A program made the position numbers and the translations under genes. A stretch of 35,143 bases of DNA from Pelomyxa schiedti (taxonomy: Eukaryota > Protista > Evosea). Position 1 is the stretch's first letter. Each line of letters starts with the position of its first letter. The notes beneath the pieces are model-generated. The model worked only from the letters and a program-made list of their open reading frames with translations. It was not told the origin of the DNA and made no database searches. Positions 31,154 through 35,143 of this stretch are shown here, in pieces. The stretch is taken from NCBI GenBank assembly GCA_020536535.1, contig JAHLWZ010000973.1, positions 1 to 35,143 on the forward strand. Direction: 5' to 3'.

Positions 31154-33301
31154 ATGGCACAGACCACGCTACCGCGACGTGAGCTTCCACTGTATTATCC
31201 GCCGTGCGCATTTACTGCGCATTGGAACAACTTCAAGACCGCTTTGGAGAGTTCTCCCCTGTCAAACTTCGGACAGTACGGAGTGTTTTTCCTTCAGTAC
31301 ATTTTTTAAAACATGTGAACAGCCTTCGTTCCATTATCAACCAAATGCATGAGTGGACGAATGCCAATGCGCCGCCAATGACAGCCGCGCAGTTTCAGAG
31401 GCTCTCTGGACTCGAGGGTCTCAGAAGCGCAATTGACTGGATGGACTCGCACCAGGGGTCGTGGTGGGACCCCAATTTCATTCCCGCCACCACCACCCCT
31501 GACACCCCCCCTTCCACACCAACCGGCGAAAATTCCACGCCCACTCCACCTCCGCCGCCACCGCCTCCACCACAACCAGGAGAAAAAAAGGCCTCGGCCG
31601 GTAGAAAAAGGCACCCTGTGACGCACGAGTGCCCAGACTGGTGGACCCAAGTTTTGCCACGAATTCGCAGTTTGGCGTTGCGTTTGCCTGAGGTGTGGCC
31701 TCATTCATGCTCCTCTGCAACAGCTTCCAGTAATTCGGCCACTGCGAATACTACTACTCCTACTTCTGCTGTTGCTAGCACATCCGAGACTCCCGCAATG
31801 GCTTCGGTCGAATCAACGGGCTCGGCAAATACGAAGATTCATGTTGCAACTGAGTATGGAGTGCGTGTACTCCAGGCCGGCTCCAACTGCAACATTGTAT
31901 TGTCCTCTGCTGCTTGTTTATCTCTTCTGGCGACTTCATTTTTCTGTAATATCATTGACTACACAAATCAAGTCTGCCAAGCTAATTCAATAACTACTTC
32001 TCTAATCAAATATTCAGCAAGCCTTTATCTCAAACTGGACTTGTCGGTCAGAACTTCAGGTTTCAGAATGGGGTAACCTTGATTGGTTTGCTCTCTTTGG
32101 TTCAAGAGTAGATACTGGGATCGAGCGAATTAAATGTTTTCTCGCACTTTTTTACCTGGCCACAGCTTTCCCTGACGAATTTGATGCAGGTTCTTTTCTT
32201 TTTTGAATTGAGCCATTTACCAAATCCCTGCCCAGGCGATGTCACTTTTTACCGTAGCTGTGTAGCGCAGGATCACCTCCCATCCTGGAGTACATCCACC
32301 ACTCCACTGAGTTTTGACATTCAGCTACACACCAATCGCATGGAGATCGCCGGTGCCGGAATGTTTGTTGACTTTGCAAACAAAGATTTGCATATTGGGT
32401 GTATAATACCTTCTGCAACACAAGTTTGTTTCCTCTTATCATTTGGAGCTGAAGGAAATTACCTCATTGCACCCTACCTTTTTAGGAAGAAGTACTATTT
32501 TCTGTTAGGCCTTATCTTTTTGTTGGCCTTCTATTTTCTCAAACAATGGAAGATAATGAAGCAATAATAATCACTGGATGCAAACAAGTTATCAAATACA
32601 CTGGATACTTATACAGTTTTCAAATGGCAGGTACACACTGCACTATCATATTTACTTGTAATAATTTTGTACAAACAAGGTGTATTTTCTCCCACCTCAA
32701 GAAAGTTCAAAGCAGAGCCACCTCATATTATCGCTATTGATGCCGTTACATCGGGGCAATTTGACGATGATCTCCTTATTCGGGATCTCAATAAGGCCTA
32801 CATTGGTTTCTCAGGTATACCTGGATCTACTCCTCCGGCCCAAACTATAACTACTGGAGGCTGGGGCTGTGGTGCTTTTGTATGTTTTCCTCTTTTGTAC
32901 CAAACTATCCTTAACACACACCAGGGAGGCAACGTATTCCTTAAATTCCTGCAGCAGGTTGCTTTCTTTCCTTCCCTTTCAGCCTGGCTCTAACCCATTG
33001 TCAGTGGATGGCAATATCAGAAGCACACAAAGTAATGCTGTTCTCCACTTTTGGAAAAACACTGGAACACAGAGAGCTCAGTGAAATCGTGAAGCTTGCC
33101 AAAGAGGCTGGTTACCGAGTATGTGACATCCACAGAATTATCAGCGAGTTCGGTTCCTCCAAGAGAGCAGATAAATTCCAAAAGTTCTTGCTCAGCAGAA
33201 TGACACCTCTCCCTCCACCGCCAACACAACCAAATGCAATTGCAACAACAGACACTACCAGCCCCGACACAACAAAACCTCCCACAAATAGTTCAGAGTG
33301 A
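31154..33301 (+). CDS. PARG: Poly(ADP-ribose) glycohydrolase, variant catalytic loop
   Basis: CLSLLATSFFC, FVDFANK..TQ|EEVLF..P, MEDNEAIIITG, YTGY (Tyr clasp), IIAIDA, RDLNKAYIGF, TGGWGCGAF|GG, KFLQQ|WMA. Confidence 0.9.
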
Positions 33302-33390: not shown

Positions 33391-35143
33391 ATGCAGGGTA
33401 GCCAGGCTGGTGCGTGGTTCAAGTACGCAGCCGGGACATTGGCTCAGTGGGACACGAGGTGGACGTGCCCTGTTTGCGGAGGGCCGGCGTTTCGCCCTGC
33501 GGTTCACGAGTGCGGTTCCTGGCTGTGCGACGCTTGCTCCCAAGACGTATGTGTCTACCTTACCCCGCCACGGAACCTAATTTTTTGTTTTCGGGGTGGG
33601 GTGGAGGAGTCGATTTGTTTGACTGACATTGGCTTGTGACCAGAGGAAGAACTGCCCGACGTGTGGGGCGCGAATTAGGGGAAGATTGAACCCTGTGACG
33701 GACAAGCCGATTCTGGATAAGCTCGCGGCGATTGAAGTTCACTGCCCCGCGTGCCACGAGAAATTTCTGAGGGACTTGATTCTCTCCCACATAGTTGATT
33801 GCCCAATTGGTTGGTTTCAACTCCCCCCTCACTCTATTTATGAAACACTCTTTACTCTCCTCTCACTGAACGTTTCAGAATGTCCCAACAAATGCGGAGT
33901 GAAAGTATCACCGAACCATCAGGCGGAACATGAACGAAGTTGCGTTAATGTTCTGGATGTTTGCGCCGATTGCAAACAATCTATTCCAAGACGACTATTT
34001 GATGACGGGTCCCACCAGAAGTTGGATTGCCCAATTTGTATAGCCTCCTTCATTTCCTTGTTTCCTTACTTGTTACAATGGAACAGATTGCGCGAATGGA
34101 TGTGAGAAAAGGGTGAAACCAAGAGATATGGCTGAACACCAGGCCACAACATGCACAATGGCATTGGTGAAGTGCCCCGCAGAACGGATTTGCACATGGA
34201 CGGGACCAAGGCAACAACTCTCGATCCACGTACAATCCTGTGTTATGGTCAAAATGGCTCCTGCTTTCGAATCTCTAGTTGCCGAAAACAAACGAATGCA
34301 AGCTGCGCTAAACGCACTGGAGGAAAAGAATGCCGAATTGGAGCATAAGAACACTGTACAAACTGCTTTGTTACAAGAAATGCAAGGAAGCAACAACAAA
34401 GTTATAGAGTTATGCAGACTGTATAAGGAGTTAGAAGCCAACCACGTTAAAGACGTGGACTACTTGACAAGTGAATTGGAGAGAATGAAGACTGAATTGC
34501 CCCTCAAGCGGATCAAGTTCACAACACTCAACGGGGCACTCAATACCGGGCCAACAATTGTTGATTACACATCACCTCTCCAGCGGGGAGTCACACTTTC
34601 CAGGGGGATACAGCGTTGGGTTGTACCATTATCCGGAACCTTCAAAATCACCGCTGTTGGTGCAAGCGGTGGCAGCGGTGGCAGCGGCGGCAGCGATGCT
34701 GGACTTGGTGCAGTTGTAACATCAGTTGTGGAGTTGACAAGAGGCCAAGTTCTCAACATTCTAGTTGGCCAGCCTGGCGTATCTGCTGAACCCGGTTGCG
34801 GTGGAGGTGGTGGAGGGACTTTTGTATGGGAAGATGAGGTGGTGGTGAAGTTCGCCCCGCTGGCGACCAACGGGAAGATTCTGATATGTGCCGGCGGGGG
34901 CGGCGGCTCCGGCACCAGCGGCTGGTTCCAGTATTACGGGGACTGTGCCTCCCTCAGCCCCCACGTGAAGACCGGCCGTGGCGGGGCAAACGGCGAGGGA
35001 GGCATCGGGGCCGGGGGCGGCGGTGGGTCAGGGTGGCTGAGCGATGGCGCGCCGGGCAGGGGAGGAGCGGGGGCCCGCCCGCTGAGCGGGGGTGTGGGGG
35101 GATGCATGACGGCGGCGCGCGGGGGGTATGGAGGCGGGGGCGG
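33391..35143 (+). CDS. TRAF-like RING / TRAF-zinc-finger / coiled-coil protein with C-terminal ALK/LTK-type glycine-rich domain (3' partial)
   Basis: RING CPVC..HECGSWLCDAC..CPTC; several TRAF-type fingers (ECPNKCG..HERSC, DCANGC..HQATTC, KCP..CTWTG..HVQSC); coiled coil; then FTT..GPT..GIQRWVVP.SGTFKITAVGASGG..ILVGQPG..GGGGGGTFV..ICAGGGGG. The frame is open to the window end. Confidence 0.85.

What the first reader, a model, noticed from the sequence alone, without database searches (positions are those of the whole stretch)
33391..35143. TRAF-architecture E3 ligase whose MATH domain is replaced by an ALK/LTK-type glycine-rich domain
Seen in the sequence: the spliced frame gives RING, TRAF-type zinc fingers and a coiled coil, the N-terminal layout of TRAF adaptors. 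From about 34518 it reads FTTLNGALNTGPT..GIQRWVVPLSGTFKITAVGASGG..GAVVTSVVELTRGQVLNILVGQPG..GGGGGGTFVW..ILICAGGGGG. Known: the ALK/LTK extracellular TNF-like/glycine-rich domain has the same motif order (FTTCGASGPHGPT..GIQIWKVP..YSISGYGAAGG..LYILVGQQG..GGGGGGATYVF..LIIAAGGGG). There is no signal peptide or TM segment in the visible part. Inference: a cytosolic, oligomerising ubiquitin ligase uses a polyglycine-II ligand-binding module as sensor or substrate receptor, possibly for intracellular microbes. The ORF track misses this exon.
Basis: partly seen in the sequence, partly recalled or inferred. Interest (0 to 1): 0.8.

Follow-up and report, generated by a model that had tools for sequence, protein, structure and literature searches.

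The report
TRAF-like ligase with ALK-type glycine domain
An anaerobic amoeba (Pelomyxa schiedti) has a real gene that joins a TRAF6-like RING, zinc-finger and coiled-coil scaffold to the glycine-rich ligand-binding domain otherwise known from the outside of ALK/LTK receptors and bacterial surface proteins. This is an apparently undescribed, probably cytosolic use of that domain, and its function is untested.

Summary
The window is a whole contig of Pelomyxa schiedti. A four-exon gene starts at 33391 and is cut by the contig end at 35143.

- **One open frame.** Exon 4 alone holds the last TRAF-type zinc finger, an ~85-residue coiled coil and 211 residues of glycine-rich domain.
- **ALK-type domain.** That domain matches human ALK ectodomain chains directly (phmmer E 5.6e-7). 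Its model is confident (pLDDT 89). Foldseek returns only ALK/LTK/SCD-2 TG/GRD structures as significant hits (21 hits; next E 0.18).
- **TRAF6-like N-terminus.** Its model matches TRAF6 RING-zinc-finger structures best (E 3e-9). The RING is a variant and no Pfam RING model hits it.
- **Family.** At least seven loci share the layout. The same domain clade also follows B-box/coiled-coil scaffolds, and the same TRAF-like scaffold also carries SPRY.
- **Context elsewhere.** Sampled relatives outside Pelomyxa all have extracellular partner domains.

Not shown: RNA support for one transcript, the last ~80 codons, ligase activity, the ligand, or absence of the architecture in other eukaryotes. The scan's first readers noted paralogues on other contigs of this genome. 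I rate it a new variant of a known kind, interest about 0.6.

The parts
33391..33546 (+). Exon 1: start codon and first part of the variant RING (C-x2-C ... H-x-C-x4-C-x2-C)
   Evidence: Translation. It equals residues 1-52 of GenBank protein P0001. At least 29 paralogous copies of this exon occur in the genome. It is weakly similar to the TRIM21 RING, E 0.003.
33547..33643 (+). Intron 1, 97 nt, GT..AG, phase 0
   Evidence: The same junction is used in GenBank model P0001.
33644..33809 (+). Exon 2: last RING Cys pair (CPTC), a linker, and the first half-unit of TRAF-type zinc finger, ending at DCPI
   Evidence: Aligned with paralogues in A3 and A4.
33810..33878 (+). Intron 2, 69 nt, GT..AG, phase 1, placed right after DCPI
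   Evidence: Paralogue C850 has an intron at the same position and phase.
33879..34037 (+). Exon 3: one complete TRAF-type zinc-finger unit (CPxxCG ... H ... C ... CxxC ... SH ... DCPI)
   Evidence: zf-TRAF is sub-threshold here but over the cut-off in paralogues P0118 (34 bits) and P0190 (28.3 bits). The model has pLDDT above 90 over this part.
34038..34086 (+). Intron 3, 49 nt, GT..AG, phase 1, again right after DCPI
34087..34253 (+). Exon 4, first part: last TRAF/Sina-type zinc finger
   Evidence: Sina_ZnF 25.8 bits and zf-TRAF 16.7 bits, both below their cut-offs. Foldseek of the N-terminal model gives TRAF6 RING-ZnF as the top hits, E 2.6e-9 and 3.0e-9.
34254..34502 (+). Exon 4, middle: coiled coil (P0001 residues 217-299)
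   Evidence: The model shows a helix from residue 202 to the model's end. Three copies are predicted as a parallel, in-register bundle with heptad-spaced contacts; score 0.70, best control 0.01.
34509..35143 (+). Exon 4, last part: ALK/LTK-type TNF-like/glycine-rich (TG/GRD) domain. About 211 of about 285 residues are present; the open frame runs off the contig end.
   Evidence: The domain stops at the GG[FY]GGGG motif, about 75-85 residues before the C-terminus seen in complete paralogues.

Best explanation
The locus is an intact nuclear gene of Pelomyxa schiedti, truncated only by the assembly. It encodes a soluble, most likely cytosolic, multidomain protein. The N-terminal variant RING and about two and a half TRAF-type zinc-finger units are laid out as in TRAF6. 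A parallel coiled coil follows, which probably makes the protein a homo-oligomer, a trimer by analogy with TRAFs. A C-terminal ALK/LTK-type TNF-like/glycine-rich domain sits where TRAFs carry MATH and TRIMs carry SPRY. Shown: the domain identities, their order, their continuity in one frame, and the recurrence of the layout. Inferred: the RING and zinc-finger part recruits an E2 and ubiquitinates, and the multimerised glycine-rich domain is the target-recognition module. The domain's swapping with SPRY and between TRAF-like and B-box scaffolds fits a lineage-specific family of recognition ligases. That family may act in cell-autonomous handling of prey or of the amoeba's cytosolic prokaryotic symbionts.
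For: - **Continuity.** The zinc finger, coiled coil and GRD lie in one uninterrupted 351-codon frame. The upstream exons are joined by three GT..AG introns and match GenBank model P0001.
- **GRD identity.** phmmer hits ALK/LTK/SCD-2 chains at E 5.6e-7 and an Exaiptasia LTK-like protein at E 3.3e-6. Paralogues pass Pfam PF12810 (40.2 and 30.2 bits). The model has pLDDT 89.1. All 21 significant Foldseek hits are ALK/LTK/SCD-2. ESM Atlas neighbours have TM 0.74-0.87, and seven of the ten clusters listed are annotated with PF12810.
- **TRAF6-like N-terminus.** Foldseek's top hits are 5vo0_D and 3hcs_A at about E 3e-9, followed by TRAF5/6, LNX, RNF125 and TRAF2.
- **Coiled coil.** Three copies score 0.70 against a best control of 0.01, with at least 97% contact agreement between runs and pLDDT at least 85. 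The mark was reached by 21 of 30 solved homomers and 0 of 23 solved monomers among microbes, and by 17 of 29 and 0 of 30 among eukaryotes. The calibration used two copies, not three.
- **Recurrence.** The RING exon lies 0.8-1.3 kb upstream of a GRD on the same strand at C670, C807, C850, C636, C792 and C1325. The complete paralogue P0106 has 641 aa.
- **Modularity.** The same scaffold carries SPRY in P0191 (34.4 bits). B-box/coiled-coil scaffolds carry GRDs of the same clade. That clade has SH-aLRT 100 on a quick tree.
- **Location.** No hydrophobic N-terminus or transmembrane stretch is present; the maximum 19-residue Kyte-Doolittle mean is 1.34.
Against: - There is no RNA evidence. The only RNA run has contigs on the neighbouring gene but none on this one.
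- The RING lacks the canonical His after the third Cys (CGS instead of CGH), and no Pfam RING model hits at E<=1, so ligase activity is uncertain.
- zf-TRAF and PF12810 stay below their Pfam cut-offs on this copy itself.
- The last ~80 codons are missing, so a C-terminal extension cannot be excluded for this copy. Complete paralogues end right after the domain.
- The oligomer number is not resolved, because only three copies were tried.
- Nothing here addresses what the domain binds.
Confidence: 0.6

Rival explanations
1. The protein has the same architecture but acts as a non-catalytic adaptor. The variant RING no longer supports ubiquitin transfer, and the protein only bridges GRD-bound partners to other factors through its zinc fingers and coiled coil.
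For: The canonical His ligand is replaced (CGSWLC) in the window and in paralogues. No Pfam RING hit appears at E<=1. The RING part of the model has lower confidence, pLDDT 73-84.
Against: Eight potential zinc ligands are kept in the order C-C-H-C-C-C-C-C and are conserved across paralogues. The His two residues before the third Cys is conserved. The model still superposes on TRAF6, TRIM21 and other RING structures. At least 29 copies of this exon are maintained in the genome.
Confidence: 0.2
2. The glycine-rich domain is not a target receptor. It is a self-assembly or structural module, for example one that builds higher-order lattices, and recognition is done by other parts or partners.
For: No ligand is known for any non-metazoan member of the family. 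Many relatives are giant proteins with up to 8 or more tandem copies, which could fit a structural role.
Against: In the only characterised members, ALK and LTK, the domain is the ligand-binding region (PDB titles of 7nx0, 7nwz, 7n00 and 7ls0). In Pelomyxa it occupies the position that SPRY occupies in sister proteins. Paralogues differ most in the length of loops between the glycine runs.
Confidence: 0.1
3. The fusion is a gene-model artefact. The RING and zinc-finger exons and the glycine-rich exon belong to separate transcripts, or this copy is a pseudogene.
For: There are no RNA contigs over the gene. GenBank models of this family are often faulty. P0001 has a wrong 3' end. P0118 is fused to a PI3-kinase fragment. 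P0189 ends aberrantly after a frameshift.
Against: The last zinc finger, coiled coil and GRD share one uninterrupted frame. Exon order, intron positions and phases are repeated in paralogues. There is no stop or frameshift in 1,753 nt. An independent complete model, P0106, has the full architecture.
Confidence: 0.05
4. The protein is secreted or surface-exposed like other GRD proteins, and the zinc-finger part is an extracellular cysteine-rich region.
For: Every sampled GRD protein outside Pelomyxa has extracellular or secretion-type partner domains.
Against: P0001 and the complete paralogue P0106 have no signal-peptide-like or transmembrane segment. The N-terminus models as a TRAF6-type RING and zinc fingers, which are zinc-dependent cytosolic or nuclear modules by established knowledge.
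Confidence: 0.03

Closest known systems
TG (TNF-like + glycine-rich) supradomain of ALK, LTK and nematode SCD-2 (Pfam PF12810; PDB 7nx1, 7lrz, 7n00, 7lir)
   Same: Same motif order and same fold. phmmer gives E 5.6e-7. Foldseek gives E 4.9e-7 and TM by query up to 0.72. Paralogues pass the Pfam cut-off.
   Different: In ALK and LTK the domain is extracellular, sits before a transmembrane helix and a tyrosine kinase, and binds ALKAL cytokines. Here there is no signal peptide, transmembrane helix or kinase, and the domain is C-terminal to a RING, zinc fingers and a coiled coil. Identity to the ALK/LTK chains is only about 24-30% in the Foldseek alignments. The ligand is unknown.
TRAF6 and other animal TRAFs (RING, TRAF zinc fingers, coiled coil, MATH)
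   Same: Same N-terminal order. The best structural matches are TRAF6 RING-ZnF structures 5vo0 and 3hcs at about E 3e-9, and TRAF2 3knv also appears. The zinc-finger pattern is TRAF-type, and a parallel coiled coil is predicted.
   Different: There is no MATH/TRAF-C domain, which is the family-defining domain. The RING has a permuted ligand order. The sequence is too distant for any non-Pelomyxa protein to be found with the N-terminal profile.
Dictyostelium TRAF-like E3 ligases such as TrafE (PMC10181826)
   Same: Both are amoebozoan TRAF-like RING ligases. TrafE acts in endolysosomal damage response and cell-autonomous immunity, which is the kind of role proposed here (title and abstract of PMC10181826).
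   Different: By my own knowledge of the family, not tested here, the Dictyostelium proteins keep the MATH domain. No sequence link to them was recovered in these searches.
TRIM ligases (RING, B-box, coiled coil, PRY-SPRY)
   Same: Both follow the logic of a multimerising ligase scaffold with an exchangeable C-terminal recognition domain. Pelomyxa has B-box/coiled-coil + GRD proteins (P0110, P0084) and TRAF-like + SPRY proteins (P0191).
   Different: The window's gene has TRAF-type fingers, not B-boxes, and a GRD instead of SPRY.
Bacterial and cnidarian PF12810 proteins (partners include Ig_7, Por_Secre_tail, EGF, PAN, fn3 and cadherin)
   Same: Same domain. ESM Atlas neighbours have TM 0.74-0.87. 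The profile finds 11,861 cluster representatives.
   Different: All sampled ones have extracellular or secretion-type contexts, often with several tandem copies. The Pelomyxa TRAF- and B-box-linked domains form their own clade on a long branch.

Membership tests
ALK/LTK glycine-rich domain (Pfam PF12810, TG supradomain) | Score over the Pfam gathering cut-off (24.5 bits) | tested here: not met
   The truncated window piece gives no PF12810 hit at E<=10. GenBank model P0001 scores 21.0 bits. Close paralogues pass: L013 40.2 bits and L016 30.2 bits. The shortfall fits truncation plus divergence.
ALK/LTK glycine-rich domain (Pfam PF12810, TG supradomain) | Direct sequence similarity to solved ALK/LTK ectodomains over non-glycine motifs | tested here: met
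   The nine best PDB hits are ALK, LTK and SCD-2, E 5.6e-7 to 1.4e-4. An Exaiptasia LTK-like protein hits at E 3.3e-6.
ALK/LTK glycine-rich domain (Pfam PF12810, TG supradomain) | TNF-like beta sandwich interwoven with glycine-run segments (fold) | tested here: met
   The AF2 model has pLDDT 89.1. All 21 Foldseek hits at E<=3.6e-4 are TG/GRD structures.
ALK/LTK glycine-rich domain (Pfam PF12810, TG supradomain) | Complete domain through the C-terminal GGGGGSF ... G-x-G-x-V-x-I strands | not testable with these tools
   The contig ends at the GG[FY]GGGG motif. The DNA run contig also stops at 35035. Complete paralogues have this part.
ALK/LTK receptor tyrosine kinases | Signal peptide, transmembrane helix and intracellular tyrosine kinase | tested here: not met
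   P0001 and the complete paralogue P0106 have none of these.
TRAF family | C-terminal MATH/TRAF-C domain | tested here: not met
   The position after the coiled coil is taken by the GRD. There is no MATH hit in Pfam scans of P0001 or P0106.
TRAF family | TRAF-type zinc fingers (PF02176, cut-off 27 bits) | tested here: inconclusive
   The window copy scores 16.7-17.1 bits, and Sina_ZnF scores 25 bits; both are below their cut-offs. Paralogues with the same repeat unit pass: P0118 34 bits and P0190 28.3 bits. The model matches TRAF6 ZnF structures.
TRAF family | N-terminal RING of C3HC4 type | tested here: inconclusive
   No Pfam RING hit at E<=1. phmmer to the TRIM21 RING gives E 0.003. Foldseek matches TRAF6 RING-ZnF at E 3e-9. 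The ligand order is C-C-H-C-C-C-C-C instead of C-C-C-H-C-C-C-C.
TRAF family | Parallel trimeric coiled coil before the C-terminal domain | tested here: inconclusive
   Three copies are predicted as a parallel in-register bundle, score 0.70 against a best control of 0.01. Two and four copies were not tried, so the copy number is not established.

The most novel reading that the evidence does not exclude
Pelomyxa recruited the normally extracellular ALK-type glycine-rich domain once into the cytosol. It then shuffled the domain between TRAF-like and TRIM-like ligase scaffolds, building a lineage-specific family of multimeric pattern-recognition ubiquitin ligases. These would sense and tag prokaryotes in the cytoplasm, whether escaped prey or the amoeba's own obligate endosymbionts. 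This would also suggest that the ancestral job of the ALK ligand-binding domain was recognition of microbial or foreign surfaces.
Probability: 0.2. Interest if true: 0.8.

Novelty: new variant of a known kind. Interest (0 to 1): 0.6.

Why it matters
The ALK/LTK glycine-rich domain is known functionally only as the cytokine-binding part of two animal receptor kinases. Its thousands of relatives in bacteria and invertebrates are uncharacterised and appear extracellular.

A family in which this domain sits at the recognition end of cytosolic RING ligase scaffolds gives two things. It is the first intracellular context for the fold. It is also a tractable handle on what the domain recognises outside animals, because the domain is interchangeable with SPRY and shared between TRAF-like and B-box scaffolds.

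The family also adds a lineage-specific, immune-receptor-like ligase expansion in an amoeba that keeps prokaryotes in its cytoplasm. That is relevant to how hosts police endosymbionts. If the family proves restricted to Pelomyxa and has no ligase activity, it remains a curiosity of domain shuffling.

Tried and rejected
- **Pfam on the truncated domain.** PF12810 did not hit at E<=10. I did not take this as evidence against homology, because paralogues and direct PDB matches are positive.
- **RNA support.** The RNA run has a spliced contig on the upstream gene only. This says nothing about expression of this gene.
- **Recovering the missing 3' end.** No other contig overlaps the window's end. 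The DNA run's contig stops at 35035. A C-terminal half-GRD on C1091 lies inside a 20-kb contig and is not the missing piece.
- **MATH in the genome.** PF00917 gave no candidate, but the control genomes were silent too, so this is uninformative.
- **ESM Atlas feature search with P0106.** No usable hit.
- **N-terminal scaffold outside Pelomyxa.** Both a single-sequence search and a profile search found only Pelomyxa proteins. These searches are word-seeded and length-limited, so absence elsewhere is not shown.
- **Literature.** Searches for PF12810, for glycine-rich domain with TRAF, and for polyglycine II with ALK found no paper describing this architecture. The genome paper mentions neither TRAF nor glycine-rich proteins.
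- **Tree.** The careful tree search did not finish, so only the quick tree is reported.
- **Exon joining.** The spliced product was examined only through GenBank protein P0001, which a search returned, and exon by exon by reference.
Full report
**Source and gene model**

The window is the whole of contig C973 of a 52.4-Mb, 5,337-contig assembly. The organism is Pelomyxa schiedti. The gene's own GenBank product came back as P0001, 'TNF receptor-associated factor 5 [Pelomyxa schiedti]', 464 aa, on a 35,143-base contig.

Reading the DNA and translating exon by exon gives four exons: 33391-33546, 33644-33809, 33879-34037, and 34087 to beyond 35143. The three introns are GT..AG and 97, 69 and 49 nt long. 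A neighbouring gene has a 47-nt GT..AG intron confirmed by an RNA contig, so these sizes are normal here.

Each exon translation occurs unchanged in P0001. P0001 leaves the open frame after nt 34931 and ends with about 22 residues unrelated to the paralogues. The uninterrupted frame keeps the family motifs to the contig end, so I take that frame as correct.

The spliced product was handled only as P0001 or exon by exon.

**The key junction needs no splicing**

Exon 4 is a single 351-codon open frame. It holds the last zinc finger, the coiled coil and the glycine-rich region.

**The glycine-rich region is an ALK/LTK-type TG/GRD domain**

- phmmer of the 211 residues from 34509 against all PDB chain sequences returns ALK, LTK and nematode SCD-2 ectodomains as the nine best hits (E 5.6e-7 to 1.4e-4). 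The alignment runs through the non-glycine motifs.
- In the large protein collection the exon hits PF12810-annotated proteins and an Exaiptasia 'leukocyte tyrosine kinase receptor' (E 3.3e-6).
- Pfam PF12810 itself does not reach its cut-off on this copy. The truncated piece gives no hit, and P0001 scores 21.0 against a cut-off of 24.5 bits. Paralogues that are 49-60% identical do reach it: 40.2 and 30.2 bits.
- A profile of the Pelomyxa domains finds 11,861 cluster representatives at E<=1e-3 among 1.84 billion proteins.
- With a 73-sequence alignment (A2), AlphaFold2 gives pLDDT 89.1 and pTM 0.89.
- The 21 Foldseek PDB hits at E<=3.6e-4 are all TG/GRD structures of LTK, ALK or SCD-2. TM by query is 0.61-0.72 for ALK/LTK. 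The next hit has E 0.18.
- ESM Atlas neighbours have TM 0.74-0.87 over 173-201 residues. They are clusters from Bacteria, Cnidaria and Chordata, and seven of the ten listed carry PF12810.

The alignment with complete paralogues shows that the window stops at the GG[FY]GGGG motif, about 75-85 residues short of the C-terminus. The missing end could not be found.

**The N-terminus is TRAF6-like, with caveats**

Pfam gives only sub-threshold hits on this copy: Sina_ZnF 25 bits, zf-TRAF 17 bits, and no RING model at E<=1. Paralogues with the same repeat unit pass zf-TRAF: P0118 34 bits and P0190 28.3 bits.

phmmer finds TRIM21, BIRC7 and TRIM69 RINGs and a TRAF4 finger weakly, at E 0.003-0.04. An AlphaFold2 model of residues 1-225 was built from an 8-sequence alignment. 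It has pLDDT 81.8, above 90 over the fingers and 73-84 over the RING. Its best Foldseek matches are TRAF6 RING-ZnF structures (5vo0_D at E 2.6e-9, 3hcs_A at 3.0e-9). TRAF5/6, LNX1/2, RNF125 and TRAF2 follow.

The RING is a variant. The His that normally follows the third Cys is Ser or Ala, and a His two residues before that Cys is conserved. Eight potential ligands therefore remain, in the order C-C-H-C-C-C-C-C. Whether it is catalytically competent is unknown.

The zinc-finger units are one per exon. Phase-1 introns lie right after each DCPI, and the same is seen in paralogue C850. This explains the differing repeat numbers among paralogues.

**Coiled coil**

Residues 217-299 of P0001 are helical. 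Three copies of residues 212-302 were predicted as a parallel, in-register bundle with heptad-spaced contacts.

- The score was 0.70 and the best of three controls was 0.01.
- The runs agree in at least 97% of their contacts, and the partner pLDDT is at least 85.
- The mark was reached by 21 of 30 proteins solved as pairs of one chain and 0 of 23 solved as single chains among microbes.
- On eukaryotes it was reached by 17 of 29 and 0 of 30.
- The calibration used two copies, not three.

This supports self-association. It does not fix the copy number.

**Location**

Neither P0001 nor the complete paralogue P0106 has a hydrophobic N-terminus or a transmembrane-like stretch. The maximum 19-residue Kyte-Doolittle means are 1.34 and 1.27, both inside beta strands. 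Together with the RING and zinc fingers this points to a cytosolic protein. That is an inference.

**A family, not a one-off**

- The genome has at least 13 close GRD paralogues and at least 17 further PF12810 places.
- The RING exon has at least 29 copies.
- At six other loci (C670, C807, C850, C636 which equals C836, C792, C1325) a RING exon lies 0.8-1.3 kb upstream of a GRD on the same strand.
- P0106 (Pelo_11004, 641 aa) is a complete RING, zinc-finger, coiled-coil and GRD protein. It is 38% identical to the window's N-terminal 300 residues.
- The same N-terminal scaffold carries SPRY in P0191 (34.4 bits) and unrecognised C-termini in P0190 and P0193.
- B-box/coiled-coil proteins carry a GRD: P0110 and P0084.
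- On a quick maximum-likelihood tree of 73 GRDs, the TRAF-linked and B-box-linked Pelomyxa domains form one clade. It has SH-aLRT 100 and a stem of 0.74, and the two scaffold types are interleaved within it. The careful search did not finish. All rows of A2 were used.
- Other Pelomyxa GRDs, such as a weakly fn3-like (sub-threshold) + GRD group, fall elsewhere.

This pattern fits a single recruitment of the domain to these scaffolds followed by shuffling.

**Context outside Pelomyxa**

Every sampled relative has extracellular or secretion-type partners: fn3, He_PIG, cadherin, PAN, EGF_CA, EB, Ig_7, Por_Secre_tail, MAM and kinase. Many are giant multi-copy proteins.

Searches with the N-terminal scaffold found only Pelomyxa proteins. 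These searches cannot prove absence elsewhere. No eukaryote-wide genome collection was available.

**What is not shown**

- There is no RNA evidence for this gene. Runs X1 and X2 are DNA. The single RNA run has a spliced contig on the upstream gene only.
- There is no evidence on ligase activity, on the ligand, or on any connection to microbes.
- The idea that the family handles cytosolic prokaryotes rests on three things. P. schiedti is known to harbour numerous cytosolic endosymbionts (PMC8887013; PMC10579272). Dictyostelium TrafE is a precedent (PMC10181826). Multimeric ligases generally carry exchangeable recognition domains.

**Comparison and novelty**

The protein works like a TRAF or TRIM-type multimeric RING ligase. 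It is not a TRAF family member in the strict sense, because it has no MATH domain. Its C-terminal domain is a member of the ALK/LTK GRD family by sequence and fold, but the protein is not an ALK/LTK receptor.

GenBank labels the gene only as 'TNF receptor-associated factor 5', and the precomputed Pfam annotation lists only the Sina finger. I found no paper describing this architecture.

First readers of this scan noted paralogues on other contigs of the same genome (s1-611548, s1-400253, s1-386935). My checks of paralogous loci agree with them.

**Verdict**

- It is a new variant of a known kind.
- Interest is 0.6.

Noticed in passing
A single-cell RNA-seq contig confirms the splice. The last exon of that gene ends at the TGA at 33299-33301, only 89 nt before this gene's ATG.
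   Followed up: partly
L011/L012 and L014/L015 (G000:C636 and G000:C836): Contigs C636 and C836 carry identical copies of two GRD genes, with the same scores and the same relative positions. They are probably duplicate or haplotype contigs of the single-cell assembly, so paralogue counts are slightly inflated.
   Followed up: no
L014:1156-2064:- (G000:C636:137135-137692): This TRAF-like GRD paralogue changes frame near the 3' end of the domain; the family's C-terminal motifs continue in another frame. GenBank model P0189 therefore ends aberrantly. The cause could be a sequencing error, a tiny intron or a pseudogene.
   Followed up: partly
P0118 (GenBank KAH3758034.1, on G000:C792; L013): The GenBank model named 'Phosphatidylinositol 3-kinase VPS34' joins a PI3/PI4-kinase fragment to a TRAF-zinc-finger, coiled-coil and GRD gene. 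A separate RING exon lies at C792:111886-112020. The model is probably a merge of two neighbouring genes.
   Followed up: no
L020, L021, L022, L024, L028 (G000:C800, C908, C444, C997, C258): A second, separate Pelomyxa GRD family has a conserved N-terminal region (with only a weak, sub-threshold fn3 match in L020) followed by a PF12810 domain (50 bits in L020) and a C-terminal extension. Tandem copies lie on C444 and C997. Whether these proteins are secreted was not examined.
   Followed up: partly
P0191, P0192, P0190, P0193 (other contigs of G000): The same RING, TRAF zinc-finger and coiled-coil scaffold occurs with SPRY in P0191. P0192 shares SPRY-like C-terminal sequence with P0191 but gave no Pfam SPRY hit. 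It also occurs with C-terminal regions that match no Pfam family in P0190 (residues 290-449) and P0193. This suggests a larger family of ligases with exchangeable C-terminal domains.
   Followed up: partly
L010 (G000:C483), B-box + GRD gene: A run of N interrupts the B-box region of this gene in the assembly. A near-duplicate of the flanking sequence lies beside the gap, which suggests a local assembly problem.
   Followed up: no
window 33810-33878, 34038-34086; L008 about 900-1110: Each TRAF-type zinc-finger unit is one exon, bounded by phase-1 introns immediately after the DCPI motif. This holds in the window and in paralogue C850. It is an arrangement that allows finger number to change by exon duplication; paralogues have from about 2.5 to more than 5 units.
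   Followed up: partly
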